64,000 bases of DNA from Ruditapes philippinarum (lineage: Eukaryota), in the NCBI RefSeq assembly GCF_026571515.1, contig NW_026867019.1:124001-188000 (forward strand), given 5' to 3'. The position numbers and the translations under genes were made by a program. Positions within the stretch are counted from its first letter, which is position 1. Each line of letters starts with the position of its first letter. Shown here piece after piece: positions 3,212-40,324 of the stretch. The notes below the pieces were generated by a model that saw only the letters and a list, made by a program, of their open reading frames with translations, made no database searches and was not told where the DNA came from.

Positions 3212-3585
3212 AAAGAAAAAGTTCCGGGTAAACCTCAGGTCAAAGGTAATATTGTGATAATACTGCCGACTCTAAATACAGCGGGAACAAGCCGTAAATA
3301 ACTGATATTGGTAACTATAGTTAAAATTAATTTCCTCTCGATTTTTTTAAACTATTACGATGTGTAAACCTACAATTTACGATAACAAAATCAAGAAATA
3401 TTAAAAAATTAGATAAAAGTTATAACGACCTCAAATGAACGTAGAAAAAATTAAAACTTTATGATTAATGTAAAAACTTGGGAAAGCTTTTTTAAAAATA
3501 TTATGGGATTATTACATGATTTTTGAAAAGAAAAAAACGTCAATGTGATCAAAGTTAAATTGACTTACAAGTGGATAACAATGTT
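3212..3585 (+). pseudogene. Relic of a family C (RRM) gene, coding exons 2 and 3
   Basis: gccgactctaaa (~3265) and gaaaagaaaaaaacgtcaatgtgatcaaagttaaa (~3525-3559) match C2/C3 exons 2 and 3; the intervening intron shares taacgacctcaaatg; multiple indels. Confidence 0.65.
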
Positions 3586-8005: not shown

Positions 8006-8197
8006 TCAGCGCCACAGGAAAATTGCTTGCGGAGTAATTATCTTTCGTCCACCTCCACAAATACTGGCACCATTACCTCCCGTCCCACCTGAAGCACTAC
8101 TTCCGGCTCCACTTCCTCCCCCACCGCCCCCAGCACCTTCAGCTTGGCCTCCCTGACCACCTGCACCACCTGAATTGTTCGAGTTAGTGTTGCACAT
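8006..8197 (-). CDS. Glycine-rich microprotein family A, copy A1 (63 aa, starts MCNTNS)
   Basis: Intact ORF paralogous to 12463-12657 and 32023-32217; 5'UTR intron 8205-8425 (GTAAGT...TTGACAG); AATAAA at 7867-7872. Confidence 0.8.
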   Translation of the reverse strand: MCNTNSNNSGGAGGQGGQAEGAGGGGGGSGAGSSASGGTGGNGASICGGGRKIITPQAIFLWR

Positions 8198-8425
8198 TTT
8201 TTCACTGTCAATTAAAAGTGTTTTAAGATATTAATTATAATCCGAATTACATATTGTCTAATAGAAAAACAACAACAACAAAAAAACAACAAATTAAACA
8301 TTAAAATAAGAATAAAGATACAAATAAGTACTGGAAGTAAAATATATACATCTTAAACACTGTTTGCTGCATTGTCACGTTCAATGTTGTATTAATTAAC
8401 TTAGTTTATAACGTCATCGACTTAC

Positions 8426-9440: not shown

Positions 9441-10577
9441 ATATATCTCCCTCATAAAGAACAAGATAAATCGAAGCTGTTAACACACACACATACATAC
9501 ACGCATGCACGCACGCACGCACACATAAATAATACGGAAAATGAAAATGGAGTAAATTTAAATACGCTGTAATTTGTCCAATGAATTGTTCTTATGTATA
9601 GAATGTAAATAACATAATTATTTTAGAGCATTGCATTATCATTGCTGCATAATATACGAAAATGAAAGTAAGATTTATTGGTTAAAATATACGCAAATTT
9701 GAACCCACTGTTTACAAATTTACAATAAATTCAAATTAAATATTCCACGATGATAATAAAATACCCGAGTTACCAGTAACACGTCTCTTCTATAGGCATT
9801 ACATGATTTTTTTTGGCGTTTCTTTCTTTTTTTGAATTTTTTTCGTTTACCTCAAAGTTCTGATTAATATGATTCGAAAGCAAATTTATTTAGAAATGTG
9901 ATGTCTTTTTGATAAACACTTCATCATTGTGGTTTTATTAAATATCTTATAGCAGACATTCTGGTACCTGTATATATGAAAAATGATAAGTTCAAACAAT
10001 GACGGCGTCAGAGAAATAAGAACAACGTTAAAAAGCGCATGGTATACATGTCTTTTTGCAGACTTCACGTCTAATTGTGGACGTCGCTCAGCACATAAGA
10101 ACATCGTTTTATGAATTGTATACAATATCAACAAATATCTGACTTTATTATAAATTCAATTTGATTGAAAAATATATATGGTTTAGGGTTTTTCTTAATA
10201 TCATCTTTTTTATTTAAAGAGTTATAAGTAAACATGAGTTTGTTGTTATAGATAACTGATATTATCTTTTATTAATACATATATATAATTAGTCGTTACT
10301 TCAATAAAACAGATGACATTGTTGCTGGGACATACTAGTCAAAGATTGTTTACAAAAGCATTTTAAGTATATATATTTTTTTAAACTATAATTTCTATTT
10401 AGTAACGCAAAACCTTAAGACTATAAAACATGTAGTATTTCAATGAATCCATACCATCAATTGAAAAAAACTGATCTTTCATTAACTAAAACATTCTCGA
10501 AATAAAACGAATGATATCATAATTATAATTGAAGTGCTCTGAAGTATGGCGAGTCTTTATGTGGCGAATCGTCTCTA

Positions 10578-11413
10578 CACACATAGGCACTTATAACCCG
10601 ACACTGACTTTTTCCTTAAAAACATACGTTATTTGTGAACGGATTTTGTTTAGATTTGGACTTTACAAAATTCAATATATCATACTACTACTTAGAATTT
10701 TATTTACAATTCATTGATAAGAAAATAGAAAAAATAGCAAAACAAATAGGCTACTGTAAAAGGAAAAATCACAAAATGACTGTAAAAATCGTAACACAAT
10801 GAACAGTCTCTGAATCCTATAAAATATGTATGTTTACCAGTTCTAACACTTTATATGACCTCCCAATTGGCTATAACAAAGTAAACACCTCTGCCTCACA
10901 GTTCTTTATTTCTAAATAAGGACTTGCCCGTGTTCCAGGAAATTGCGAGGAACTTTTGGCTGCTTTCTTACACGCCTTTTCAATTCAGCCGACAAGTGCG
11001 ATGTTTAGATCTTGTAACTTGGAATGCAGGAGTTGCTTGAACTCGAGGAAGCCCTTATTCCGAAATGGAGAAGTATTCACTCCGTCATAACCACGAGACA
11101 GGTGTTTAAACTTTGTTATAGTCATGGGATGACACAGAAAGTATTAGAACTGGTTATTATACGGAATCAGTTGGATTTAGAGACTTTTCATCATATTACG
11201 ATATTTACAGTCATTTTGTGATTTTTCATTTTGCAGTAACATATTTGTTCTGTTATTTTCTCTATTTTCTTGTTAATGAATTGGCAGTGAAATTTTAGAT
11301 AATTAAGTATGGTATATTGAATTTTGTATGTTCAAAAACGGAAAAAAATCTGTTCTCAAATAACCAAGTTATACCGAAAAATGTAAGTGTCGGGTTATAA
11401 GTGCCTCTGAGTG
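10578..11413. mobile_element. Non-autonomous TIR transposon (MITE), TA target duplication, Tc1/mariner-like
   Basis: Imperfect inverted repeats of about 210 bp (aggcacttataacccgacact... / ...agtgtcgggttataagtgcct), TA at 10576-10577 and 11414-11415, no transposase ORF. Confidence 0.8.
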
Positions 11414-12462
11414 TATTGTGCGGCGACTGGCAATGGGACGAATCGTCACTAAAGTGGGTCGAGTCCTTGGGCATCATAACGCATCAGTTATTGATATATC
11501 TGATTTTGTTTGTAATCATCCCGGGGCATTTTGAAAATCTCAGACGTTTAATACTTCACATATTTAACTTTTTAAAAGGATATTATTGTTTCGTTAAGCT
11601 CTCATTAAACCATTTCTATGAAAGATTTGAACATTAACATATCTACAAAGCACAAGACACGACGCCATACAATGCAAAATTCAAATATATATAAAATTCA
11701 TATATACAAATTTGATTTCTATCCACACCCGACAGTTTACCGTATACTAAGAATAGTATTGTCAGGTCCTATTTCGTCTGTATCGTGTGCAATTATACAC
11801 GTGTATTTTGATAATACTGTCCGCTATATTTCAGTATTTAACTTATTCCGGGGAAAATTAAATATAATGTTGTAAGCAATTGATGTCCAAACCGTTTGCT
11901 ATATATTTATCGTTTATGACATTATCATACATATTTAAGGTGCCATAAAATAAGTTTAAACTAAACAATAAGTATTGTAATTCTATGGCGTATATAATAA
12001 TATAAAAGAAAAAAAATAACAGCATAAATGCTTCGATGCTTTTCGTATCCGAACGACTGGCCGTGTGCGATCATTGGATTCTATATGGATCAATAAGCAC
12101 CGTGAATTACATGTATGAATTGTCGATGTTGATGAAAAGAATGGTCAGGGACAATAACACACAACAATGTTATCAAAAAGGAATAAATTTATTACCATAA
12201 CATATACTTAATTTACATTATTGAATAATTACATGAGTTCATCATTTTCTGTCAAAGTTCAAACTGTCTTATGAACGCATATGATTGGTTTATACATCAG
12301 ATACCAAGTAACACAGTGCACATTTTTGATCGATATTGTTACAAATTTGTCTGTTTCAATGTTATGAAGATGATACCTGAGACAAACAAGAAGATAAGAT
12401 AATCGATATTGTTATATGAAAATGAAGTGATAGATAATAAAAGGAGCTATTAAAGTGTTTGT

Positions 12463-12657
12463 TCAACTCCATGGAAACAGGCCTGAAGGGTAGAGGTATC
12501 TTCTGCCTTCACTTCCCCATAACTTGCCGCCATGTCCACCGTTTCCACCTGGAGCATTACTCCCGGCCCCACTTCCTCCCCCACCACCTCCTGCACCAGC
12601 GGCTTTTCCTCCTTCACCTCCTGCTCCGCCTGAATTGTTTGATCCAGTATTTCCCAT
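12463..12657 (-). CDS. Glycine-rich microprotein family A, copy A2 (64 aa, MGNTGS... ends YLYPSGLFPWS)
   Basis: Intact ORF; acceptor TTAACAG at 12664-12665, donor GTAAGT at 13220; Gly triplet pattern conserved among paralogs. Confidence 0.85.
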   Translation of the reverse strand: MGNTGSNNSGGAGGEGGKAAGAGGGGGGSGAGSNAPGGNGGHGGKLWGSEGRRYLYPSGLFPWS

Positions 12658-13243
12658 TTTATTCTGTTAATTAGAACGAAGTAAATATACAATGATATCG
12701 ATGAAATGTATTTATATAACGGATAATGTACAAATATATGCATTAAGAATTGCGAATCTTAACTGAGTTTTAAACTTGTTATGTTTTAAACTGAGTAAAC
12801 AATGTTAAAGTTTTCAAGTCTACAATCTAATTAAAATCAGCTCCTAATTCAAGCTATGTATTAGATCTGATGGTCATTTCTTTGCGACCTTTTAAACAAT
12901 CAATCATCAGCGAGCTTTTACAAATTTCAATTTTGAAAGCAATGCTGTTTCTAATTTTAACCACTGGAATACCAATTCTGAGTAGGTTCATATAGCTGAC
13001 AAGTACAATTAAGGTAAGACTAATTCGGTGACAACAATATCTTAATGCAGGAAATAACGTAAGTATATATGAACTTAAGTCTGATTGCCAGACGTATTAT
13101 ATATAATTAAATTTAAATCAATAACGAGCACACTCCGATCAGCATAAAATTACACAAATAATTTAAAACTTTCGACACAATAACTTTCGATATAATATAT
13201 AAAGCTAAATCTTTACTTACAGAAAGTTATTGATATATCTTGA

Positions 13244-14520: not shown

Positions 14521-14805
14521 ATGGGAAATAGCAACGACACAAATTATGGTGGCGGCGGCGGGGGAGGAGGTTGCAATGGTGGGGCGGGTGGTGGTGGTGG
14601 AAGTGGTGGTGGACCTGGCGGAGGAAGAGGAGGAGACGGAGGACGTCCAAGACAGAACGGTCAGGATGGTCAAGATGGTGTTAATGGCGGTGGAGGAGGA
14701 GGTGGTGGTGGAGGCGGGGCAGGAGGAGGCAGAGGGGGGAGAGGAGGTCGTGGAAGTGGAAATGGAAGAGATGGACAGAACGGACAAGATGGAAGTTATT
14801 ATTAG
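14521..14805 (+). CDS. Glycine-rich protein family B, copy B1 (94 aa, MGNSND...GQDGSYY)
   Basis: Intact ORF from ATG 14521; donor GTAAGT at 14233, acceptor AG at 14504-14505 or 14511-14512; paralog at 33436. Confidence 0.85.
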   Translation: MGNSNDTNYGGGGGGGGCNGGAGGGGGSGGGPGGGRGGDGGRPRQNGQDGQDGVNGGGGGGGGGGGAGGGRGGRGGRGSGNGRDGQNGQDGSYY

Positions 14806-16937: not shown

Positions 16938-18784
16938 ATGGATGACTGTAAAAACACAGTAATTATCACGGGATTTGGACTTGATATCAAGAAAGAGGAT
17001 TTTATCCAACATTTCAAACGTTTTGGAGAAATACAAGTATGTTTTTAGCTTCCTTTCTCTAAAGAATGTTTCGATATATTTATCAAGATTGACGTTCATT
17101 TAAGTTGATTACCTGTATTTGTGTCTTAACTTGTACAGTAAACGAACATATGCGATAGATTTCATATGAATTTCCGAACGTTTGATTTGGGTAACTTAAA
17201 TTGTAAGACCTTTACTTCACATTTATTTTAACCGAAGTTTATTTCCCTTTCCTTAGCTTGCAAAAATATTTTCTTGTTTGATTCACATAACTGTATGAAC
17301 TGAGATAAATACTATCATAATTGTTTTATGTAAACGTTAATTATTGTTAAATATGAAGATATAAATGCATACTTGTATGTATATTTACACAGAAAAGTAA
17401 CCTTGTAACTACAGGATCGGAAGGGGATAGTGACATATGCCACTCTAAAAAGCGGAACGGGCTGTAAAAGAACTTGAGGTTTTTTTTAAAAAGCATATAA
17501 ATCGCATTAAAAATAGCACTTTTATTCTGTAGCAAATTACTAACCTTAAATTGTAAATATTTTTAGTTATGATTGAAATAGGTCCGCAAATGTTACCGTT
17601 ACCGTTACCAGTTATTTTCAAACGAAATTTTTTTTTATAAAAGTAATTACGACCTCAAATGCACGTAAAAGCTTATCTTTATAAACATATAATGCTTCTT
17701 TAAAAATATTATTGCATTATTGTACATAATTTCAGGAAAAAAAATAAACGGAAATGTGATCAGAGTTAAACTGATGGACAAGTGTTATAACATCGATAAG
17801 ATTTGCAATGAAGGTAAAATAAGTTTAATTGTTTCGAGTTAATAAACTATACTTGTAAACCAATATTCGAGTCACCCTCTATGATGATATGATATCATTG
17901 CTATCAGAAAGCTTTTTATATCAAATAAATGTGTGCATGATTATTGTAAAATTGTGCTAATTTTGATGAAAGCTATGAAATCATATACATTAATCAAATA
18001 AATCCAGAGAGATTTACTTTAATAATTTACATTTACTTTAATACTTTAATATTTCTTACTTTAATAAGAAACAACGTAACGAATGATAAACAACAAAAGC
18101 TTTTATCTATTTTATTGATAGCTTAGTTTAAGCATTTTGAATTAAACTGTGTAATACAATGGGGTTTCAGATTATGGTAACAACACAACAAACAACCAAA
18201 AAGATATACCTTGTGATGAACATCACAAGAAAAAGTTTGGTGGCGGTAAAGGTGGAAAAGGAGGGACCGGAGGTTCGAACGTTCCCAGTGGACATGATGG
18301 TGAAGATGGCGAACCGGGTCCTGGGGGAAAAGGTGGTGCAGGTGGTAGACCGGCTATAACTAATCCAAACCTGGGTAAAAGAGCCTTTGAATCGAATAGT
18401 GAAAATATGAAAAACAAATATGAATGTACCGGTGGTGGAAAAGGCGGTAAAGGTGGAACCGGGGGTCGGAACGTTCCAAGTGGACATGACGGTGAGGACG
18501 GCGAACCTGGTCCTGGTGGCAAAGGTGGTGCGGGTGGCACACCAGCAGTATCAAAAAACGACTATACATGGAATGGTAACTGGAACAACGATCCATGGTA
18601 TACAAGATGGTTTGGTCTTGGAAGGCCTAATAAGAAAAACGCGCAAGAATATCATTATTCAGGTGGCGGAAAAGGTGGAAAAGGCGGAATCGGGGGTCCG
18701 AATGTTCCAAGTGGACATGACGGCGAGGACGGAGAGGCCGGTCCTGGTGGTAAAGGTGGTGCGGGTGGCAGACCAGCAGTGTGA
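16938..18784 (+). CDS. Family C copy C1: RRM + three Gly-rich modules (exons 16938-17036, 17393-17478, 17736-17813, 18171-18784); exon 2 frameshifted as assembled
   Basis: GT-AG boundaries at all exons; exons 1, 3 and 4 open; exon 2 is 86 nt versus 88 in paralogs, with several single-base indels. Confidence 0.75.
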
Positions 18785-21700: not shown

Positions 21701-24058
21701 ATTAAAATAAAGGGTTGTGAAAGTTTTTACTTTTGACATCTTATAAACATAACATTATAAGTACACCATATTCCAGATATAACCCCAAAAAAATCCTTTC
21801 CTAAAGGGTTTAAACCAATTACTTATATATAAGGAAGTTCAACTGAAATTTTGTTTAAAATTTAAATTTGCTATGTATGAGCTTCAAATTTTTTTATAGC
21901 TAAAAATGTTTTTTTTTTTTATTTTTTTTCCCGCAATAATCCCGATATTTTTAACCCCTTACCGCGGGGCACATGACGGGTCCTTTAAATAAACACATTA
22001 AATAGAAAATTATATTTTGTAATGTTAGAACATAATTAGTAAATAGCTAAAATTCTACATTTTTTAACTTTGTAAAAAAAAGTTGTTGCTTTAAAATTTT
22101 TCCCTATAAGAATTAAGGCGGTTTGCATTTTGTATGGAAGAGAGAACAAAGGGTTTAAAAGCCCAGGCAACTTTCAAAGGGGGGAGAAGCCAAAATACTA
22201 CTTTGATTTTTCTTTTTTGCTAGATTTTCTCCAAAAAATACTTTTTTTTTTTTTGCTACATTTTACAAATTTCCCAATAATCTACTTTCTTCAGGTGATA
22301 AATATTTAACTGTTTAACGAAGCATTTCAACGATAAAAGCTCATAATTACCTTTTCTAAAGAATGTAAAAATACTGTATCTGAGGTATAATATGCCTTTA
22401 ATATGTATTCCAAGCTATTCAATGTGTTTTAACCATATTTTCTCGCGATATATTTGAACAATGAAAGCATAAAATATACATGAAAGATGTTATGTATTCA
22501 CTATTTACGACGTATATACGTTATTTCTCTGACTATTGGACCATTTAAACTTTTTAATATAAGAATCAATTTATGGGCCTTTACTGAACGGGTTTTAAAA
22601 TATTTTTTAGTAGAGCCTTAACATTAAATTCCTTGTTTAATTAATTTAAAATCCCTTTTAAATAAAGAAGATTAATCTATTATTCTTAACACTTCGTTCA
22701 CGATCTTTATAACAAGGTAAATTATCCCTTGATAAAAATTGGTATTATTTATGGTTTAATATATACCCCTTTGAGCAGTTTCATTTGTATCGTAAATTCC
22801 GTAAACCTTAAAGCTATTGACGTCGCTGCAGGTTCTAATAACATATAGGTTTATGGCACCTACCAGTTCCTACCTTTAATCTATGTGAAGACGTCCAGAA
22901 ACGTTTCCTAAACTTTTACTATTTAATTATTGACAAATATATGGCCAGCCAAAATTACAAAACAATACAGTTCAATCGTTTTTTGTAACTTAGTTTTTTA
23001 TACTTAATTTATATAGATATATCTGTTGAATATTTGTTTACTACTGTTAAAATATATCTTCATCTCCAACACCCTGATTAATTTATACTTTATTGGAACC
23101 TTAAGTCAAAGACAGACACATATTTAACTCTTTAAAGGGTTATTTCTCTTAGGTTAAGCTCTCAATAAACACCATTTCTATAAAAGATTTGAAAATTTGC
23201 ATATCTACAAAACACAAGGCACGAAGCCATACAATGCATTACATGGCGACCTAGAATTTAGCAAAACGATTTCATACAGTCAAATTTGATAACTATCTAC
23301 ACCCGAAAGTTTACTGTATACAAAGAATAGAATTGTCATGTCTTATTTCTTCTGTATCGTGTACAATTATACACAGTGTTTCAGTTTGATAACCCCCCTA
23401 CTGGCCCGTTTATATTTTCCTGTATTTAATATATTCCGGGGAAATTTTTAAATCTAATATTGGTCAGCAAAATTTGATGTCCAAACCATTTGCTTTCGGT
23501 AATAATATTTATCGTTTATTGATATTATTATACATATTTTAAGGTTCCATAAATAAGTTTAAATAACCTATAAGTATTATAAATCTATGATGTATATAAT
23601 AATATATGAGCAAAATAACAGCTCAAAATGCCGTAAATGCTTTTATTATCCGATAACGACTGGCCCGTGTGGCATAATTTGGAATAATAAGCACTGTGAA
23701 TTATATTTATGAATGGTCAGAATGTTGTATGAAAACAATGGTTAGGGACAATAACAACAAATGCTATCCAGAAAAGGAATGAATTTATTACCATAACATA
23801 TACTTAATTAACATTATTGAATAATTACATAAATTCACCATTTTCTATCAAAGTTCAAAAACGTTTTATATACGCATATAATTGGTTTATAAATCAGATA
23901 CCAAGATACCAGCGCACATTTTTGATCGATATTGTTACAAAATTGTCTGTTTCAATGTTATGAAGATTATTCCTGAGACAAACAAGAAGATAAGATAATC
24001 GATATTGTTATATAATAATGAAGTGATTGATAATAACAAAAGCTAATAAATTGTTTAT

Positions 24059-24240
24059 TTAACTCCATGGAAACACGCCTGAAGGGTTGATTTATTTTTT
24101 GCCTTCACTTGTGCCGCCATTTCCACCGTTTCCGCCCGGAGCAGTACTCCCGGCCCCACTTCCTCCTCCACCACCTCCCTGCACCCGGGCTTGTCCTCCT
24201 TGGGCCACCTGGGTCCGGAATTGTTTATCAATTTTTTCCA
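24059..24240 (-). pseudogene. Family A copy A3, no ATG and frameshifted as assembled
   Basis: GGGGGGSGAGSTAPGGNGGNGG core and PSGVFPWS* tail retained; the 5' part lies in homopolymer-rich, low-quality-looking sequence. Confidence 0.65.
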
Positions 24241-25414
24241 AAAAATTTTTTTTCTGTTTTAAAAAAGAATGAAACAAAAGTACAATGATATCGTGATTAT
24301 AATATTATATTCCCAAAAAAGAAAATATATGCTTGGATTTGTTAATTAAACTTGTTATGTTTTAAAAATGGGGTTAAAAACGTTTAAATTTTAAAATCTA
24401 AAGAATTTTGATTTAAAACAAAACTCCTAATTAAAAACCCTATTATTAGTTTGACGGGCCCAATAAAGGCGGGCTTTGGGGGACTTTTAACAAAACATTT
24501 AACGGCGGCTTTCACAAATTTTTTAAAAGGGGAGCTGTTTTTTAAAAGTTTAAACCCTTTAAAAACCCCTACTGGGTAGGTTTCCCAAAAGCCCACAAGT
24601 AAAACTGGCAAAACATTTCCCCCCTTGGGGCCCCTCTAAGGGGTTTCTAGTTTTTTTTGTAAAAAAAAAAAGGTTTTTAAGAAAATCAAACAATTTTGTT
24701 TTTTAAATTCCCCACCGGGAAAAGCCCGGGTATTTTGATACCTCGTCTAATCCCTATGTGTTAATGACTGTTTGAATGCATGGCTAAAATTCCTTTAGCA
24801 GGAAATCCGAATTACAGTGAAGGTGGTAAGACAAATTCGGTGACAATCAGATTTACACGCAAGATGTAACTTTAGTATATATGAACTTTAGTCATTATAT
24901 TACATACAATTAAATTTAAATCAATATGGTGCACACTCCAGTTATCATAAAATTACACAATTTATTAATAACAATCGATATAATATATAAAGCTGACACA
25001 CGTCATTACTTACAGAAAGGTTTTGATATATCTTGATATGTATAAATATATATTATACTTTCCGATTCGACGAATTACTGTAAATATATAAAATATATAT
25101 TACAAATACAACTATATCATTGTATTTTATTTTTTTCCAATCAAGTATTGTAATCCAGTTTTGTATAGTTATTCCATTTGCAATTATTTTACATGACAGA
25201 CAGTTACAAAATAACAGTAGTACATAGAAGTTAGTGCATAGTGATAATATTATGATCATTACAATAATTATTGATACTATATGGAAAGAAAACAAAAGAA
25301 TGGGTGATAACGGCTCGGGTGATATAAAATCTTAACAGGTAATATATCCACATATATCACTCCAAAACCAAAATAACATATAATATTTGAATATTGCAGG
25401 AAATAAACAGAAAC

Positions 25415-27318
25415 ATGGATGACTGTAAAAACACTGTAATTGTCACGGGATTAGGACTTGATATCAAGAAAGAGGATGTTATCCAACATTTCAAACGTTT
25501 TGGAGAAATACAAGAATGTTTTAGTTTCCTTTCTCTAAATAATATTTCGATATATTTATCAAGGTTGACGTTCATTTAAGATCATTTCCTTTGTTTGTGT
25601 CTTATCTTGTATAGTACACGAATGTTTTACCTGTATTTGTGTCTTATCTTGAATAGTAAACGAACAAATCACTACATTCACCGCGACGGATATCATGTGA
25701 TATACATGTCTTTCTCCCGAACCTTTAATTTGAGTAACTTAAATTGTAAGACTTATACTTCACATTTATTTTAACAGCAGTTTATTTTCCTTTCCTTAGC
25801 ATACAGCATATAAAAAGCACATTTTATTTTCTTGTTTGATCCTCATCTCCACACATAACTGTATGGAAAGAGATAAATACTATCATTATTGTTATGTATA
25901 CGTTAAGTATTGTCAAATATGAAGATCTGAATGCACACTTGTATGTATATTTACACAGAAATGTAACCTGGTAACTACAGGATCGGAAGGGATAGTGACA
26001 TTTGCCGACTCTAAAACTGCGGAAGAAGCTGTAAAAGAACTTGACGGTATTTGTTTTTTGGCATAATAAAACAGCATTAAAATTGTTGAACTAATATATT
26101 ACTGTATGCAAATCTGTCTGGTCTTAAAAATTGTAACTATGTTTCAGTTATGATTGAAATAGGTCCGCAAGATTTCAAAAATGTTACCGTTACCAGTTAT
26201 TTTCAAACGAAATTTTTTTTTATAAAAGTAATTACGACCTCAAATGCACGTAAAAGCTTATCTTTATAAACATATAATGCTTCTTTAAAAATATCATTGC
26301 ATTATTGTACATAATTTCAGGAAAAGAAATAAACGGAAATGTGATCAGAGTTAAACTGATGGACAAGTGTTATAACATCGATAATATTTGCAATGAAGGT
26401 AAACCAAGTTTAATTGTTTCGAGTTAATATTTTCTTCAGACTAAACTATACTTGTAAAACCAATATTCGAGTCATCCTGCTAACAAAAAGCTATTTATAT
26501 CAAATAAATGTGTACATGATTATTGTAAACTTGTGCTAATTTTGATGAAAGCTTGAAATCATATACATAAATCAAATAAATCCAGAGTATATTACTTTAA
26601 TAAGAAACAACGTAACGAATGATAAACAACAAAAGCTTTTATCTATTTTTATTGATACCTTAGTTTAAGCATTTTGAATTAAACTGTGTAATACAATGGG
26701 TTTTCAGATTATGGTAACACAACAAACAACCAAAAAGATATACCTTGTGATGAACATCACAAGAAAAAGTTTGGTGGCGGTAAAGGTGGAAAAGGAGGGA
26801 CCGGAAGTTTGAACGTTCCCAGTGGACATGATGGTGAAGATGGCGAACCGGGTCCTGGGGGAAAAGGTGGTGCAGGTGGTAAACCGGCTATAACTAATCC
26901 AAACCTGGGTAAAAGAGCCTTTGAATCGAATGGTGAAAATATGAAAAACAAATATGAATGTATCGGTGGTGGAAAAGGCGGTAAAGGTGGAACCGGGGGT
27001 CGGAACGTTCCAAGTGGACATGACGGTGAGGACGGCGAACCTGGTCCTGGTGGCAAAGGTGGTGCGGGTGGCAGACCAGCAGTATTAAAAAACGACTATA
27101 GATGGAATGGTTACTGGAACAACAATCCGTGGTATACAAGATGGTTTGGTCTTGGAAGGCCGAATAAGAAAAACGCGCAAGAATATAATTATTCAGGTGG
27201 CGGAAAAGGTGGAAAAGGCGGAATCGGGGGTCTGAATGTTCCAAGTGGACATGACGGCGAGGACGGAGAGGCCGGTCCTGGTGGTAAAGGTGGTGCGGGT
27301 GGCAGACCAGCAGTGTGA
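25415..27318 (+). CDS. Family C copy C2: RRM + three Gly-rich modules, 291 aa if spliced (exons 25415-25513, 25959-26046, 26321-26398, 26708-27318); first donor reads GA instead of GT
   Basis: Exons 99+88+78+611 nt join in frame: MDDCKNTVIVTGLGLDIKKEDVIQHFKRFGEIQ-KCNLVTTGSEGIVTFADSKTAEEAVKELD-GKEINGNVIRVKLMDKC...-DYGNTTNN...GGRPAV*. Confidence 0.8.
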
Positions 27319-30300
27319 CATACAACTTCAAAACTTTGACTCCTTCGATGTTATGGTGTTTTTTCGTTCTCATATATTAGTTTTTAAGATAAAAGTATAA
27401 ACATCTCAAATAAAAGCAAATGTTTAGCAAAATAATATTTATTGCCGGAATAAGGTTGTTTTCCAATGACTTAATTTTATTGTATTGTTTCTATATCTCA
27501 ATTTAAATGTAAAACAATTACATAAATAATCGAAGATTTTAACTCTCTCATATCAAACAAGAACACAGTAAAACATTGATTAATAAAATTGTGTTTTTAC
27601 TTATTGAAACGAAATTCACAAAATGTGTATGAGATCTTGTAGTCTGATAGGAAACCCGTGTACAGAGTATATTGATATTTGGTAAATGCAAATATATTCT
27701 GTAATATTTTGTTATATTGCTGATATTTACTTTTTTATTTATAGTATATTGTGTATATTCAAACAGTATCTTGACAATGACTGCATATCGGGCGATACAG
27801 GTTTTGACTATCCTGTATTTTTGTTGATGTTACCCCTATCGTAGGCAAACGAAAGACAGATGGCGATGGTTATATTGAAGGACTAAACAAAATATAGAGA
27901 TTTTTGAATGGGTCGGATTCTTATCAACAGACATGTGATCTTTTCATTGTCAGAGGATTGAAATATTCTCCGAACTATTCTGATATAACATGTATTTGTA
28001 ACATTGCGTCAATTTAATGATTATCAACTGGGTATAACTGATGTAAACTAATTGTGTTGTTTCTGTATAGTTCAACTTTAAAATTATAGATTATGCGGTA
28101 TCTAAAAGGGTTGGCATAGTAATTAAGACTTTTCAGTTGTTAATACTAAAATATTTATGCAAGATATTAAGATATATAAAATTCCCTTGAGAGCATCAAT
28201 TATAACAATACTAAAATAGTGATAATTACAGAGTCGGTTTGATTAAAACTGTTTATCTTTAGAGATAATAACAGGTCCAACATTCATCACGTTCTCAAGC
28301 GTAATTCAACACAAAGAGTAATGTCTATCAGTGATCCCAAAATAACATCACTATGATGAAGCTTACTATTCTATAGCTTCACAGTTTTTTATACATACGT
28401 GTATAATCAATGTCCCATTTTTATAAATCATATAATGTTTTATTTTATTTAAAATCAATTATTTCATATCATCATCTTTACTTAAAAAATTGAAGCTCCT
28501 GATATTGTATCCAATATTCCAATTAAAGCAAAGTTAAACTCAAAATTAGTATTTAATTCATATGGTAGACATCAACTTGGTCAGTGTACATTTACAGAAA
28601 TTATTATTACTGGTGATTTAGTTAAATCAGAAAATTGTATAAATTATAAGGATAAGGATATAAGGAGTATCTCTGTATAGAAAATTAAATTAAAAAAAGA
28701 TGTCAAAGGAAGTGTCAGACACTTATGTTAATTGCTTTTGAAACAGAAATATCAAACAATATCTTACGGAATATGCTACCTTATTTATTGTACTAATTCT
28801 TGACGGTTCGCACCTGCATTTCTGCATTGCATTATTCTCTGTTTTATAGAACAGAAAAGACTTGCAAAAATGGAGGGAAGACAAAATATGAACGCTGAAA
28901 TTAATCTTGAGACTCTATTGAAATAAATGTATCTAATTGTTTTAAACAATAATTTCAACGATATAAAACTCGAAATATGACCGTTTTAAACAAGCACGTT
29001 TTCGGTTGCTATGTATCCTATAAAAGGAAGAATAGAATTAAAACTTTTGACAGTTGTAAATGATTGTTTTAAGAACCGTGCACCGACATATATGATATAT
29101 ATAATATGCTATTGGTGGGCTTGTACATATCTCGTAGAATCAATCTTGAGACCGGTATAGCGTGTCATCATACGTCATAACTATTAAGGGTCGCGGCCAA
29201 ATTTCCATATCAAAATACACGAAACACGAACAGACATAAAGATGATAGTTTAGTTGCTTTTGATTATAAGAGCAATATACTTTCGTTACACAGAAAAAAA
29301 GACGTCTAGAAACTTTAGTCAAAATACAGTTCCTAGTGTTGCCACTACCTTTACATTTGAACAAAGTCGTTTCAATTTCGTTTTCAGATTTCTATTGATA
29401 TATTATCGTAATAAAGACAAATACAGTATAAATAAAAAAACATGTCATCCCAGTATTACAACCAGAAAACCCTTATTATATTAAACCTTACATATGTCAT
29501 CTTAACAAAAAAAGAGACCACATCTCATGTTAAATTAAAAAATACTCTTTAGTTCCTTAGAAACGATCAAATTCTGTCTTGGATTAAATATATATTTTTT
29601 TTTCGTTCTAGGTTTTTAATACAATTATAATTCCACTAATGACACTTGTACTAAAAATAGGAAATATTACGTGTGTATAACAGATAATGGTGCAATTATA
29701 GAAACACATGTATTTATAATTATAGAAACATGTCAATGAATAAAGAAATACCTTATTCGTGATTCAGATTGAAAATAGATAATATGTTTTTGGTTTCTTA
29801 TCCTAAATATAAAAACAGTTAACTGAAACATTAGTCATCCTGAAAATTCCTGTTATGTCGAGTGATAATTGTGAATATTTATGTCAAAAGGGTAAAGATA
29901 TATGAATCTAAATGGCTAAATGATGATAATAAACTAGTATGTGTCCGTTATACGATATACCTATAGATAATAAAATACTTTTGGCAAAAGCTGTCACAGT
30001 AATCCAGTTATTATGTACTTACGCACCTGTCGGGTCCTTTAATAAACACATTAGCATAACTTAATAAATAATTCCTACATTTTTACAATTGTGAAAGAAA
30101 TAGTTGTTGCATTAAAATATTATCCTATAAGAATTAAAGCGCTTTAGCATTTTGTATGGAAGACGAGAACAAAGATTAACAAGACCAAGGCAACGTTCAT
30201 AGGGCGGAGGAAGTCAAAATAGTACTTTTGTTTCATTTTGCTACTTTTATGACAAATAATTTCCACTTCAACACTACTTTCTTCAGGTAATAAGTATTAA

Positions 30301-32022: not shown

Positions 32023-32217
32023 TCAACTCCATGGAAACACGCCTGAAGGGTAGAGGTATTTTCTGCCTTCACTTCCCCATAACTTGCCGCCATTTCCACC
32101 GTTTCCGCCTGGAGCCTGACTCCCAGCCCCACTTCCTCCTCCACCACCTCCGGCACCAGGGGCTTGTCCTCCTTGACCACCAGCTCCGCCTGAATTGTTT
32201 GATCCAGAATTCCCCAT
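32023..32217 (-). CDS. Glycine-rich microprotein family A, copy A4 (64 aa, MGNSGS...)
   Basis: Intact ORF, acceptor at 32224-32225; the upstream non-coding exon seen in units 1 and 2 appears deleted near 32560. Confidence 0.75.
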   Translation of the reverse strand: MGNSGSNNSGGAGGQGGQAPGAGGGGGGSGAGSQAPGGNGGNGGKLWGSEGRKYLYPSGVFPWS

Positions 32218-33435
32218 TTTATTCTGATAATTAGAATGAAACAAATCCTCAATGATATTGATGAAATATATATATTACGGATAATCTACAACATATGCTT
32301 TAGATATTATTAATCTGAATTTGTTATGTTTAAAACTGAGTTAACAACATTTAACAACCAATACTGAGTAGGTCCGAATAGCTGACAAGTAAACTCGCAA
32401 AACAATCTTGTACATTAAAATTTGAGTCTATTGTTCCGAGTTTATTTGTAAACAATTTGTTTCTAACGAAAATCAACAATTTGTTTTACTTCAATGAACA
32501 GCGATATTTTGATACTTCTTTTAATGCCTATGTGTCAGGATTGTTTGAATTCATGGCTAAGTACATAAAAATTAGTAAATAGTGATAATATTATGATCAT
32601 TACAATAATTGTTGATACTATATGGAAAGAAAACAGAAAAATGTAGAGAAAAAAACAGATATATAATTATATCTTATATAAAGAATTCATAAACACTTAC
32701 ATTTATTGTACAATTTAAACGCATTCACTGAATAATGTGTTACTTCTATACTGCGTACTATGAATTCTGTTTTTATACGGGAACACATGAATAATTGGAA
32801 AACCAATGAGCTAAAATTGGGATACCGGTATGTTATGTCTCATACTTTGAAAAATCCAACTACAAATTTCAGAAAAGATCAAGTACATTAATTTTGAATC
32901 TTTGAAAAGTTACCGATAACTGTTGCCTATTAATAGATTGGATGACTAAATTAAAAGATCATGTCATTTCGTAATTCGGAACAGTTTTAAGGGCACGAAC
33001 ATTCTTCTCGATATCTTTAATGAAGATAGTAAAGTATGTACGACACATTCTTATTTGTCTTGTTTCACTGAATAACTCGTATTTTCAATTTACGTAAGTT
33101 CATTTATTTATTTTTTTCAGATCGATCTAATATTTTTTTTGTCTTATTTCGTAATATTATAGCATCAATCACTTTTTTTAAGTGTAACGTTGATGTATAT
33201 ATGCTGCCAATTATGCTGCCAATATATATTATAGTTAAACATAGTTTGAAAAAGAAGCGATTGAAAAGATACAGTTTTTTTCCATTATAAAATGTAAATA
33301 TAATTGCCATAGCTTTATATACCGAGAAAATTTGAAGTACTATCACACCTAATAGAGAGAGAGAAATAAGTTAACTTTAAAAAGTATAATAACAAAGTAT
33401 AAAATTTTCTTATTTTACAGTTTCTAGTGATAAAC

Positions 33436-33705
33436 ATGGGAAATAGCAACGGCACAAATTATGGTGGTTACGGCGGGGGAGGAGGTTGGAAAGGTTGGGC
33501 AGGTTGGGGTGGTGGAGGTGGTGGTGGACCTGGCGGAGGGAGAGGAGGAGACGGGGGACGTCCAGGACAGGACGGTCAGGATGGTCAAGATGGTGTTAAT
33601 GGCGGTGGAGGAGGAGGTGGTGGAGGCGGGGCAGGAGGAGGCAGAGGGGGGAGAGGGGGTCATGGAAGTGGAAATGGGAGAGATGGACACAACGGACAAG
33701 ATTGA
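33436..33705 (+). CDS. Glycine-rich protein family B, copy B2 (89 aa)
   Basis: Paralog of B1; a GGA>TGA change at 33703 removes the terminal GSYY; three Trp codons in the N-terminal Gly segment. Confidence 0.75.
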   Translation: MGNSNGTNYGGYGGGGGWKGWAGWGGGGGGGPGGGRGGDGGRPGQDGQDGQDGVNGGGGGGGGGGAGGGRGGRGGHGSGNGRDGHNGQD

Positions 33706-36539: not shown

Positions 36540-38640
36540 ATGAATGACTGTAAAAACACTGTAGTTCTCACGGGATTAGGAAGTGATATCAAGAAAGAGG
36601 ATTTTATCCAACATTTCAAACGTTTTGGAGAAATACTAGTATGATTTTAGCTTCCTTTCTCTAAATAATATCTCGATATATTAATCAAGACTGGTGTTCA
36701 TTTAAGTTTATTACCTGTGTCTTATCTTGTTTAAATAACGAACATATCACTACATTCGCCGCGACAGATTTCATATGATACACATGTCTTTCATTTGGGT
36801 AACTTAAATTGTAAGACATATACTTAACATTTATTTTAACAGCAGTTTATTTTCCTTTCCTTAGCATACTAAAACATATTTTCTTGTTTGATCCTCATCT
36901 CCACACATATCGTATGGACTGAGATAAATACTTTCATTATTGTTTTATGTATACGTTAAGTATTGTTAAATATGAAGATATAAATGCATACTGGTATGTA
37001 TATTAACACAGAAATGTAACCTGGTAACTACAGGATCGGAAGGGAGAGTGACATATGCCGACTCTAAAACTGCGGAAAAGGCTATTAAAGAACTTGATGG
37101 TAATTATTTTATAGCATAATAAAACAGCATTAAAATTTTTGCATTAATATATTACTGTATGCGAATCAGCCTAGCCTTAAATATGGTTACTATATTTCAG
37201 ATATGATTAAAAATAAGTCCGCAATATTTAAAACTGTTACCGATGTGTGCACTACTTATTTACAAACGAAAACCAAGATAATTAAAAATCATATAAAAGT
37301 AATAACGACCCTTAATAGACTTAAAAAACCTTATCTTAATAAACAATATAATTTTATGTCAATTCGAATGCTTCTTATTCTTAATATTTTTGCATTATTG
37401 TACATGGTTTCAGGAAAAGAAATAAACGGAAATGTGATCAAAGTTAAAGTGATGGACAAGTGTCATAACAACGATAATATTCACGATGCAGGTAAAAAAA
37501 GTTAAATGGTTTCGACTAATATTCCGAATATTTGAGTCATCCTCTGATTATATGAAATCATTGCTATCAATAAGCTATTTATATATAAATGTTTACGTAA
37601 TTATTATAAAATTATGCCAATTGTGATGAAAGCCATGAAATCATATACATACATCAAATAAATCTAGAGTTTATTACTTTAATAAGAAACAACGTAACGA
37701 ATAATAAACAACACAAGCTTTTATCTATTTTAATTGATAGCTTAGTTGAATTAAATTAAAGTTGAATTAAACTGTGTAATACAATAGGGTTTCAGATTAT
37801 GGTAACAACACAACAAACAACCAAAATGATTGACATTGTGATGAACACCACAAAAAAAACTTTGGTGGCGGTAAAGGTGGAAAAGGAGGCATCGGAAGTT
37901 CGAACGTTCCAAGTGGAAATGATGGTGAAGATGGCGAACCGGGTCCTGGGGGAAAAGGTGGTGCAGGTTGTTAACCGGCTATAACTAATCCAAAACTTGG
38001 TAAAAGGGCCTTTGAATCATATGATGGATTGGCTAATAATATGAAGAACAAATATGAATGTTCCGGTGGTGGAAAGGGTGGTAAAGGTGGAATCGGGGGT
38101 CCGAACGTTCCGTGTGGACATGACGGTGAGGACGACGAGCCTCGTCCTGGTGGTAAAATTGGTGACGGTGGTAGACCAGCGGTATCAAAAAATGACTATA
38201 CATGGAATGGTAACAGGAACAACGATCCATGGTTTACAAGATGGTTTGGTATTGGAGGGCCTAAAACGACAAATGAGGAAGAACATAATTCATCAGGAGA
38301 CGGAAGAGGTGGAAAAGGCGGAGTAGGTTACAATAATGTTCCAAGTAGACATGACAGTGAGGACTGCGAACCTGGTCCTGGTGGTAAAGGTGGTGCAGGT
38401 GGCACACCAGCAGTGTCGAAAAATGCCTATACACGGAATGGTAACTGGAACAACGATCCATGGTATACAAGATGGTTAGGTATTAGAGGGCCTAAAAAGA
38501 CAAACGAGCAAGAACATAATTCTTCAGGCGGTGGAAAAGGCGGAGTAGGTTACAATAATGTTCCAAGTGGACATAAGGGTGAAGACGGAGAGGCCGGTCC
38601 TGGTGGCAAAGGTGGTAGGGGTGGTAGACCTGCAATGTGA
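36540..38640 (+). CDS. Family C copy C3: intact RRM exons (36540-36638, 37012-37099, 37414-37491), last exon 37796-38640 with stops at 37831 and 37972; four Gly-rich modules
   Basis: All splice sites canonical; the spliced product ends after 100 aa; the downstream frame is open from ATG 38041 to 38640. Confidence 0.75.
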
Positions 38641-40324
38641 CATACAACTTCAAAACTTTGATTGTTTCAATGTTATTATTATTTTTCCCGTTCTTTTACA
38701 TTGGATTTTAAGATTATAGTATAAACATATCATCAAATAAAAGGAGTAGTGTAGCATAGCTATTGCAATAAAGTGTTCGCTTTTTTTAAATTTAGATAAA
38801 GGAAAATAGTGTAATGTTCATTGCAAATTGAACCTATATCTAAAGCAAAATATAAATAATTAGCAAATAATATAAATTGCCGAAATAATGTTGTTTTTTA
38901 ATGATTTAATTTTTAATTGTTTTGTTACTTAATCTCAATTTAGGAGTAAAACAATTACATAAATAATCGAAGATTTTCAATTCTCACACATCAAACAAGA
39001 ATACAGTAAAACATTGCTGAATTACAATGTACTTTTACTTATTAAAACGGAATTCACCAAGATATCTATTACATGTATATCTTTTAGTCTGAATGGAATA
39101 CCGTGTACAAAGTGTATTGATATTTTGTAAATGCACATATTTTCAATATTCTTTGCTGATATTTTCTTATGTTCTTTGTAGTATATTCAAAAGCGTGTTG
39201 ACAATGATTGCATATCGGTCGATACAAGTTTTGACTATCTTGTAACTTTGTTGATGTCACCCCTATCGTAGGCAAACAAAAAACAGATAGTAATGGTTAT
39301 AATGAAGGGCTGAACAAATCATAGATATTTTAGAATGGGGCGGACTCTTACAAACAAACAAATGAAGATTGATATAAAGATTCTGATCTCTGAACTTTTG
39401 TTGACATTTCGCACTTGCATTGCTGCATCGCATTATTCTCTGTTATATAGAAAAGAAAAATACTTGCAAAAGTGGAAAGAAGACAAAATATACGCTGAAA
39501 TTAATCTCCAGACTCTATTGATATGAATGTATTAAATAGGTTTAAACAATTATTTCAATGATATAAAACTCGTAATATCAATGTTTTAAACAAACACGTT
39601 TCCGATTGCTAGGTGTCCTACAAAAGGAAGACTGGAAATAAAGCTTTTGACAGATATAAATGATTGTTTTAATGACCGTGCTCCAACATATTTAACATGC
39701 TATTGACTAATACACGAAAAGACATAGCTGATAGCTGCTTATGAGTTAAAATGGTGATTATAAGACCAACAATTTACTTTCGGTACACAGAAAAAGAAAA
39801 AGACCACTTGGTACTTTTAGTCAAAATACAGTTTCTATTGTTGCCACTACATTTATATTTAAACAAATTATATATGTATATAATTATGCGTATGAAACAA
39901 TTTCCAAACATCAAAGAATATGTAAAATATGTAATGCAAATATATGTACATATTATATGTAATCCTTAAAATATATGCATTCATTTCTTATTGAAAAAAT
40001 TGACTTAGACTTTAGAGAAAATAAATTTTTATTACCTCCCTTTATTGACATGAAATGTAAAATTCGGCAACAATTTTTTATAAATAAGGCTTTGTGGAAC
40101 TTATAAAATTGATAAATCTGAAAGATCCTTTAACACAAATTTGTAAGGTTTTATATCATAAATATGATGCTCAAATTAAGATGTATCAATTTTGTAAGTT
40201 CCAAAAAGCATTATTCGTAACGATTTTACCGTATTTAACATTTCATGTAAATAAACGGAGGTTATAATAAATTTAATTTCTAAAAAGTCTCAGTCAAATA
40301 TTTACACAACTTTGACATAAAATA

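What the first reader, a model, noticed from the sequence alone, without database searches (positions are those of the whole stretch)
25415..27318. Hidden spliced gene: atypical RRM fused to Gly-triplet modules
Seen: four exons with compatible phases (0,1,1), repeated in three copies, give an approximately 80-aa RRM-like domain (TVIVTGL...KEDVIQHFKRFGEI...GIVTF...AEEAVKELDGKEINGNVIRV) followed by repeats of GGGKGGKGGxGGxNVPSGHDGEDGEPGPGGKGGAGGRPA. The ORF track shows only fragments. Knowledge: RRM plus Gly-rich tail is the CIRBP/RBM3/plant GRP layout, but those tails are RGG/YGG type. Here the RNP2 (VIVTGL) and RNP1 (SEGIVTF) positions lack the usual RNA-stacking aromatics. Inference: a non-canonical, possibly protein-binding RRM joined to folded modules with alternating basic (GGKGGK) and acidic (GHDGEDGE) strands.
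Basis: partly seen in the sequence, partly recalled or inferred. Interest (0 to 1): 0.82.

Follow-up and report, generated by a model that had tools for sequence, protein, structure and literature searches.

The report
Clam FUS-type RRM, glycine-module tail
This is a real, expressed and already annotated Manila clam gene for a FUS-like RNA-recognition domain followed by three strongly conserved 40-residue glycine-triplet modules; it belongs to a small uncharacterised protein family so far found only in clams and zebra mussel.

Summary
Four exons (25415-25513, 25959-26046, 26321-26398, 26708-27318; phases 0,1,1) encode a 291-aa protein, and paralogous copies lie at about 16938-18781 and 36540-38637.

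The gene is not hidden. RefSeq of Ruditapes philippinarum lists this exact protein (LOC132734522 isoform X2, uncharacterised). RNA contigs join all four exons.

Caveats:
- Intron 1 of this copy starts with GA, not GT.
- RefSeq isoform X1 uses exon 1 of the upstream copy instead, across an 8.9-kb intron.
- The upstream copy has a frameshifted exon 2, and the downstream copy has two stops in exon 4.

The RRM is real (Pfam RRM_1, E 1.4e-11). Its missing aromatics are the signature of FUS/TAF15/EWS/cabeza (FET) RRMs, the best sequence and fold matches for the family. The clam copy has also lost the FET lysine loop.

The glycine modules match no Pfam family or solved structure. They occur only in one gene cluster of this genome, with relatives in Dreissena, Mya and unnamed assemblies. 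They are under strong purifying selection (dN/dS 0.05-0.08). Whether they fold is open, because AlphaFold2 gave them low confidence.

Function is inferred, not shown: a FET-like, self-associating RNA-granule-type protein.

The parts
25415..25513 (+). Exon 1 of this copy (start codon to EIQ; RRM beta1-alpha1). The next two bases, 25514-25515, are GA, not GT.
   Evidence: Identical to residues 1-33 of RefSeq isoform X2, P0156. Pfam RRM_1 profile positions 1-25.
16938..17036 (+). Exon 1 of upstream copy 1, with an intact GT donor. RefSeq isoform X1 (P0001) uses it as first coding exon, joined to exon 2 at 25959 across an 8922-nt intron.
   Evidence: The translation is identical to P0001 residues 1-33. 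tblastn.
25959..26046 (+). Exon 2 (RRM beta2-beta3-alpha2; RNP1 position reads SEGIVTF).
   Evidence: RNA joints 25513>25959 and 26045>26320.
26321..26398 (+). Exon 3 (RRM beta4 and a Cys-containing linker).
   Evidence: RNA joints 26045>26320 (run X1) and 26396>26706 (runs X2 and X8).
26708..27318 (+). Exon 4: linker, three Gly-triplet modules, two linkers (the second rich in W/Y/N) and the stop codon.
   Evidence: 100% identical to P0001 and P0156 residues 89-291. RNA depth in the hundreds in runs X1, X2 and X8.
26773..26892 (+). Gly-triplet module 1 (40 aa).
26965..27084 (+). Gly-triplet module 2 (40 aa).
27196..27315 (+). Gly-triplet module 3 (40 aa), at the C-terminus.
27319..27699 (+). 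3' untranslated region covered by RNA contigs.
   Evidence: tables 2 and 8.
25308..25388 (.). Interspersed MITE-like repeat inserted 27 nt upstream of the start codon. It accounts for the very high RNA depth at 25249-25386, which does not belong to this gene.
   Evidence: 932 first-look candidates in the genome, often as adjacent inverted arms. (loose ends and opposite-strand joints).
17393..18781 (+). Rest of copy 1: frameshifted exon 2 (from 17393), exon 3 (17735-17813) and an intact exon 4 (18170-18781). RefSeq models only exon 3 Met plus exon 4 (P0157).
36540..38637 (+). Copy 3: exons 1-3 are intact (36540-36638, 37012-37099, 37413-37490). Exon 4 (from 37795) has four modules but in-frame stops at 37831-37833 and 37972-37974.

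Best explanation
Shown:
- This is a genuine, transcribed, four-exon gene of the Manila clam.
- It encodes a cytoplasmic-type 291-aa protein with no signal peptide. Residues 8-72 form an N-terminal RRM. The tail holds three near-identical 40-aa Gly-triplet modules separated by linkers, one of them rich in Trp, Tyr and Asn.
- The RRM belongs to the FET (FUS/TAF15/EWS/cabeza) type, which by nature lacks the RNP1 aromatics.
- The gene sits in a three-fold tandem array in which every copy carries one defect. The working mRNA uses exons 2-4 of the middle copy. Its first exon is either that copy's own (through a GA-AG intron) or the first exon of the upstream copy.
- It is one member of a small family (FET-type RRM, then a Trp-containing helix, then Gly modules) found in heterodont bivalves.

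Inferred:
- The protein probably acts like FET proteins and other glycine-rich RNA-binding proteins, as a self-associating component of RNA-protein assemblies.
- The RRM has lost both the stacking aromatics and, in this species, the lysine loop that FUS uses. It therefore contributes at most weak nucleic-acid contacts, or a protein contact.
- The Lys-bearing Gly segments and aromatic linkers would supply multivalent contacts.
- The strict triplet register and strong sequence constraint suggest the modules adopt polyproline-II-type segments with a defined partner or packing, rather than being free low-complexity spacer.
For: Gene and splicing:
- Exon structure and phases.
- RNA contigs join exons 1-2, 2-3 and 3-4.
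- RefSeq proteins P0156 and P0001 are identical to the exon translations.

RRM:
- Pfam RRM_1 at E 1.4e-11, 44.6 bits, covering the full profile.
- AlphaFold2 gives beta-alpha-beta-beta-alpha-beta topology, and all top Foldseek hits are RRMs.

FET type:
- The family profile's best single-domain PDB hit is the FUS RRM (58.8 bits, E 5.7e-15), followed by TAF15 (56 bits) and EWS (42 bits). The lysine-loop segment aligns without gaps.
- A high-confidence model of relative P0154 (RRM region pLDDT 81-98) has FUS, FUS and EWS as its only Foldseek hits at E <= 0.001.
- NCBI names one Dreissena member 'cabeza-like'.
- FUS RRM is documented to lack beta3 aromatics and to rely on the KK loop (PMC10687056).

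Family range:
- Members in Dreissena polymorpha, Mya arenaria, Ruditapes and unnamed Logan, ENA and JGI assemblies.

Constraint on the modules:
- dN/dS is 0.05-0.08 between modules of this gene, at dS 0.4-1.4.
- Module order and register are conserved across species.

No signal peptide: read directly from the sequence.
Against: - No functional data of any kind exist, and no paper mentions these loci.
- The tail is predicted with low confidence.
- The self-association job gave no answer.
- The RRM of this species lacks the FET lysine loop, so FET-like RNA binding may not apply.
- Intron 1 has a GA donor. The RNA contig over that joint holds only 32 nt of exon 1, a stretch identical in copies 1 and 2, so which first exon is used is unresolved.
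- All three copies carry a defect, and exon 4 of copies 1 and 2 differs with dN/dS about 1.8 on 14 changes. That is compatible with relaxed constraint or recent conversion.
- A raw-read RNA run showed almost no expression (X22), so expression is restricted.
Confidence: 0.6

Rival explanations
1. The tail is a folded domain. Each module would supply three polyproline-II helices (a GGK-type helix, an acidic G-x-x helix and a second GGK-type helix). These would pack with the other modules into a glycine-rich PPII bundle like the snow flea antifreeze protein, the Obg N-domain or the ALK glycine-rich domain.
For: - The register is strict: four GGx triplets, a short turn, then seven G-x-x triplets.
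- Purifying selection on the exact sequence is strong.
- The module is conserved across Ruditapes, Dreissena and Mya.
- Known PPII bundles have this composition and tolerate unrelated flanking domains (bioRxiv 10.1101/2023.11.25.568672).
Against: - AlphaFold2 gives pLDDT 25-35 for the tail of the clam protein and 40-52 for the module of a relative whose RRM is confident.
- There is no sequence match to any solved structure.
- There are no disulfides or other obvious stabilisers inside the modules.
- The alignments available were shallow, so the prediction is weak evidence either way.
Confidence: 0.2
2. The locus is a decaying gene cluster. This copy is a transcribed pseudogene or is on its way to becoming one, and the protein has no present function.
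For: - The intron 1 donor is GA.
- A repeat insertion lies just upstream of the start codon, and about 3.1 kb present in copy 1 is missing upstream.
- Copy 1 is frameshifted and copy 3 has stops.
- dN/dS is about 1.8 between exon 4 of copies 1 and 2.
- Modules of copy 3 show raised dN/dS of 0.2-0.47.
Against: - The 291-codon frame is intact.
- RNA depth is in the hundreds in several runs, with correct joints.
- An intact GT donor is available from the upstream first exon, as in RefSeq isoform X1.
- Modules within this copy have dN/dS 0.05-0.08.
- Family members are kept in distant bivalves.
Confidence: 0.12
3. It is a secreted or structural glycine-rich protein of shell, byssus or cuticle type, or a glycine-rich antimicrobial precursor. 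On this view the RRM resemblance is incidental.
For: Bivalves have many glycine-rich matrix proteins and peptides (background from the papers listed). Automatic names such as 'PE-PGRS-like' reflect composition only.
Against: - There is no signal peptide; the protein starts directly with the RRM.
- The RRM match is significant by profile and by fold.
- The neighbouring Gly-rich genes start with Met-Gly-Asn, an intracellular lipidation-type start, not with signal peptides.
Confidence: 0.03

Closest known systems
FET family RRM (human FUS, TAF15, EWSR1; Drosophila cabeza)
   Same: - Best sequence and structure match for the family's RRM.
- Same RNP1 pattern, with Glu at position 3 and no aromatic at positions 3 and 5.
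- Most family members keep the extended lysine-rich alpha1-beta2 loop.
- The RRM is followed by a Gly-rich region.
   Different: - No N-terminal SYGQ-rich region, no RGG boxes, no RanBP2 zinc finger and no PY-NLS.
- RNP2 position 2 is Ile or Val, not Phe.
- The Ruditapes and Mya members lack the lysine loop.
- The tail is built of long, exactly conserved modules rather than degenerate RGG repeats.
Glycine-rich RNA-binding proteins (CIRBP/hnRNP A18, RBM3, plant GRP7)
   Same: - Single N-terminal RRM plus a Gly-rich C-terminal tail of similar total size.
- The CIRBP RRM is the top Foldseek hit of the lower-confidence clam model.
   Different: - Those RRMs have canonical aromatic RNP1 and RNP2, and their tails are RGG/YGG type.
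- Here there are 0 RGG, 0 YGG and 10 GGK.
- The CIRBP RRM scores about 22 bits lower than FUS against the family profile.
Glycine-rich polyproline-II helix bundle domains (snow flea antifreeze protein, Obg N-domain, phage S16 gp38 tip, ALK/LTK glycine-rich domain)
   Same: Segments of 10-12 residues with Gly at one or two of every three positions, joined by short turns. Such domains are known to be grafted next to unrelated domains.
   Different: - No detectable sequence relation.
- No confident predicted fold.
- The modules are separated by 24-37-residue linkers.
- The protein is intracellular and fused to an RRM.

Membership tests
RRM (Pfam PF00076, RRM_1) | Profile match above the curated cut-off over the whole domain. 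| tested here: met
   P0001 scores 44.6 bits against a cut-off of 20.7, E 1.4e-11, residues 8-72 on profile positions 1-70 of 70. Exons 1 and 2 alone match colinear parts of the profile.
RRM (Pfam PF00076, RRM_1) | Beta-alpha-beta-beta-alpha-beta fold. | tested here: met
   The AlphaFold2 topology is correct at pLDDT 50-72, and Foldseek returns only RRMs. The relative P0154 has its RRM region at pLDDT 81-98.
RRM (Pfam PF00076, RRM_1) | Canonical RNP2 and RNP1 aromatic residues that stack on RNA bases. | tested here: not met
   RNP2 reads V-I-V-T-G-L. RNP1 has E at position 3 and I at position 5 (alignments). This is a feature of canonical RNA-binding RRMs, not of the fold family.
FET family (FUS/EWSR1/TAF15/cabeza) | FET-type RRM with a non-aromatic RNP1. 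| tested here: met
   FUS is the best single-domain hit of the family profile at 58.8 bits. FUS, FUS and EWS are the top three fold hits. The RNP1 pattern is the same (PMC10687056).
FET family (FUS/EWSR1/TAF15/cabeza) | Extended lysine-rich alpha1-beta2 hairpin (KK loop). | tested here: not met
   The loop is present in relatives P0030, P0133 and P0154. In the Ruditapes protein and the Mya protein the segment is about 14 residues shorter.
FET family (FUS/EWSR1/TAF15/cabeza) | RanBP2-type zinc finger, RGG boxes and an N-terminal SYGQ-rich region. | tested here: not met
   Pfam finds only RRM families. The RGG count is 0. The RRM begins at residue 8. The protein is therefore a FET-RRM offshoot, not a FET orthologue.
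Glycine-rich PPII helix bundle domains | Several 8-12-residue segments with Gly every third residue or more often, linked by short turns. | tested here: met
   Register analysis of the three modules.
Glycine-rich PPII helix bundle domains | A compact bundle of PPII helices in a solved or confidently predicted structure. | tested here: inconclusive
   Tail pLDDT is 25-35 and 40-52. The complex job gave no answer. The alignments were shallow.
CIRBP/RBM3/plant GRP class | Canonical RRM followed by an RGG/YGG-type tail. | tested here: not met
   RNP aromatics are absent. There is no RGG or YGG.

The most novel reading that the evidence does not exclude
The unit 'Trp-containing helix plus 40-aa Gly-triplet module' may be a new, autonomously structured domain of the glycine-rich polyproline-II kind. 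It would have been recruited onto a FET-type RRM in heterodont bivalves. If so, it would be the first repeated intracellular PPII-bundle module coupled to an RNA-recognition fold. It might give regulated self-assembly, or a cold- or stress-protective function in intertidal and freshwater bivalves.
Probability: 0.18. Interest if true: 0.7.

Novelty: new variant of a known kind. Interest (0 to 1): 0.45.

Why it matters
- It defines a small, undescribed bivalve protein family that joins a FUS-type RRM to a new, exactly conserved glycine-triplet module.
- FET proteins are the reference case for glycine-rich self-assembly. A natural variant whose tail is under strict sequence constraint could show what separates a structured glycine-rich module from a disordered one.
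- The locus is also a clear example of a working transcript assembled across partly decayed tandem duplicates, either by borrowing the first exon of the upstream copy or by splicing a GA-AG intron.
- As a gene discovery it adds nothing. The protein is already in RefSeq as uncharacterised.

Tried and rejected
- Joined spliced model: not built for any search or fold. Exons were scanned one by one by reference. Whole-protein work used database proteins returned by the tools (P0001, P0156).
- Pfam on exon 4 and on P0002-P0004: nothing.
- PDB sequence search of the tail: only a non-significant phage T5 fibre hit at E 0.71.
- ESM Atlas search of the tail: a single hit at 0.75, below any useful level.
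- Complex prediction with three copies of the tail: 'no answer', which is evidence neither for nor against.
- Rfam on 24000-28000: no match.
- Literature searches for the loci, for 'PE-PGRS' in clams and for 'cabeza-like' in bivalves: nothing relevant.
- Alternative GT donor four bases downstream of exon 1: rejected, because it gives a stop codon with either candidate acceptor (read from the sequence).
- Upstream Met-Gly-Asn gene at 14521-14802 as a coding exon joined to the RRM gene: rejected. It ends in a stop and has no in-phase donor.
- UHM-type protein-binding RRM: rejected, because there is no Arg-x-Phe motif before beta4 (read from the sequence).

Full report
**Origin and observation.** The window is contig C15506 (124001-188000) of a 1.4-Gb assembly of the Manila clam, Ruditapes philippinarum. 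It is 31% G+C and has no gaps.

- 25415-25513
- 25959-26046
- 26321-26398
- 26708-27318

The lengths of 99, 88, 78 and 611 nt give phases 0, 1, 1. The mechanical ORF list shows only fragments. Two further copies lie at about 16938-18781 and 36540-38637.

**How the spliced model was handled.** I built no joined spliced model for any search or fold. Exons were scanned one at a time by reference. Whole-protein analyses used proteins that the database tools returned.

**Not hidden.** A search with exon 4 returned a 291-aa RefSeq protein, 'uncharacterized protein LOC132734522 isoform X1' (P0001). Its cluster also holds isoform X2 (P0156, XP_060577263.1).

**Defects in the three copies and choice of first exon.**
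- Isoform X1 differs only in its first 33 residues. These equal exon 1 of the upstream copy (16938-17036).
- The reason is visible in the DNA. Intron 1 of the middle copy begins with GA, whereas copies 1 and 3 have GTATG.
- Copy 1 has a frameshift in exon 2, and RefSeq models only its exon 3-4 remnant (P0157).
- Copy 3 has stops at 37831-37833 and 37972-37974 in exon 4.
- So no copy is canonical. The coding transcript uses exons 2-4 of the middle copy. Exon 1 comes either from that copy (a GA-AG intron of 445 nt) or from the upstream copy (a GT-AG intron of 8922 nt).
- An abundant MITE-like repeat (25308-25388; at least 932 candidate copies in the genome) lies 27 nt upstream of the middle copy's start codon. 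That copy also lacks about 3.1 kb found upstream of copy 1. This may have damaged its own promoter region.

**RNA evidence.**
- Contigs of public runs join 25513 to 25959 (run X1), 26045 to 26320 (X1) and 26396 to 26706 (X2 and X8; X8 is a recorded RNA-Seq library).
- Loose ends in X1, X2 and X8 spell the neighbouring exon ends.
- Depth over exon 4 is in the hundreds, and the 3' UTR runs to about 27700.
- The contig over the first joint holds only 32 nt of exon 1. That stretch is identical in copies 1 and 2, so it cannot say which first exon was used.
- A raw-read RNA run (X22, about 4% sampled) shows almost nothing on the gene, so expression is restricted.
- The very high depth at 25249-25386 belongs to the interspersed repeat, not to the gene.

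**The RRM.**
- Exon by exon, Pfam RRM_1 matches exon 1 on profile positions 1-25 and exon 2 on positions 41-60.
- On P0001 the match is 44.6 bits, E 1.4e-11, over the whole profile.
- AlphaFold2 with a seven-row alignment gives the expected strand and helix order at pLDDT 50-72. Foldseek returns only RRMs, with CIRBP first.
- The aromatic residues at RNP2 position 2 and RNP1 positions 3 and 5 are indeed missing.

**The RRM is of the FET type.** The missing aromatics are not a peculiarity of this gene.
- An exhaustive HMMER scan of 1.84 billion representatives and a profile search recovered more distant members with the same layout. They come from Dreissena polymorpha, Mya arenaria and unnamed assemblies.
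- The family profile's best single-domain match in the PDB is the FUS RRM (58.8 bits, E 5.7e-15), then TAF15 and EWS. The FET lysine loop aligns without gaps.
- Multi-RRM proteins score higher only by summing domains of 25 bits or less each.
- A model of the relative P0154 has its RRM region at pLDDT 81-98. FUS, FUS and EWS are its only Foldseek hits at E <= 0.001.
- FUS RRM is documented to lack beta3 aromatics and to bind nucleic acid through its KK loop and flanking residues (PMC10687056).
- The Ruditapes and Mya members have lost that loop. The clam RRM therefore lacks both usual routes to RNA.
- The family is not a FET orthologue. It has no zinc finger, no RGG boxes and no SYGQ region.

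**The tail.**
- Each module is 40 aa: four GGx triplets bearing Lys, a break at NVPS, then seven consecutive G-x-x triplets that run from an acidic part into a second GGK-type part.
- Charges balance within a module (4-5 basic, 4 acidic).
- The tail has 31% Gly, no RGG and no YGG.
- The second linker is rich in Trp, Tyr and Asn. It resembles the conserved Asn-Thr-Ala-Trp-x-x-Trp helix that precedes the module in other species and is predicted with pLDDT about 87 in P0154.
- Modules within this gene differ at 14-26 of 120 nucleotides but at only 3-5 of 40 residues. That gives dN/dS 0.05-0.08 at dS 0.4-1.4. Low-complexity drift would not produce this.
- Modules of the broken copy 3 show dN/dS 0.2-0.47.
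- No Pfam family, solved structure or Atlas cluster matches the tail.
- In the clam genome the module occurs only on this contig, at eight scored places.
- AlphaFold2 gives the tail low confidence. A three-copy complex job returned no answer. Whether it folds remains open.

**Interpretation.**
- What is shown: a real, expressed, annotated but uncharacterised gene of a bivalve-restricted family that joins a FET-type RRM to a new conserved Gly-triplet module.
- What is inferred: FET-like behaviour, meaning multivalent self-association in RNA-protein assemblies. The RRM would contribute weak or no base-specific RNA contact. The modules would be PPII-prone units with a specific packing or partner.
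- Rivals: a truly folded PPII bundle (0.2), a decaying pseudogene cluster (0.12) and a secreted structural protein (0.03).

**Limits.**
- Run identities are coded, so tissue is unknown.
- No paper mentions these loci.

Noticed in passing
window 12466-12666 (-), 8009-8230 (-), 24095-24304 (-), 32026-32274 (-): Small Gly-rich ORFs that start Met-Gly-Asn (a lipidation-type start) and end in an aromatic tail. There is one per repeat unit of the array, on the strand opposite to the RRM genes. The copy at 24095-24304 lacks the start. A relative from another species (P0154) carries a similar Met-Gly-Asn Gly-rich segment fused in front of its RRM.
   Followed up: partly
window 14521-14802 (+) and 33403-33702 (+): A second kind of small Gly-rich gene. 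It starts Met-Gly-Asn-Ser-Asn, has long Gly runs, GGRGG and G-Q-D-G-Q-D-G motifs, and is preceded by a splice acceptor. It lies between the minus-strand microprotein and the RRM gene in units 1 and 3 and is missing from unit 2.
   Followed up: partly
window 25308-25388: A roughly 80-nt interspersed repeat, often found elsewhere as two adjacent inverted arms (MITE-like). It has at least 932 candidate copies in the genome and is abundant in RNA runs. Reads here show opposite-strand joints at 25308-25336.
   Followed up: partly
G000:C15506:95609-95788, 103891-104070 and 105803-106429 (loci L004, L006-L008): Further module-bearing ORFs lie 18-28 kb upstream of the window on the same contig. Two are 65-aa ORFs with one module each. 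One is a 220-aa protein (P0003) with two modules and no RRM.
   Followed up: partly
window 10576-10890 / 11100-11415 and 39994-40303: Inverted repeats of about 310 nt (79% and 75% identity), possibly ends of mobile elements.
   Followed up: no
window 3413-3580: An isolated stretch 73% identical to the end of intron 2 and most of exon 3 of the RRM gene (26222-26377). It may be a remnant of a fourth copy.
   Followed up: no
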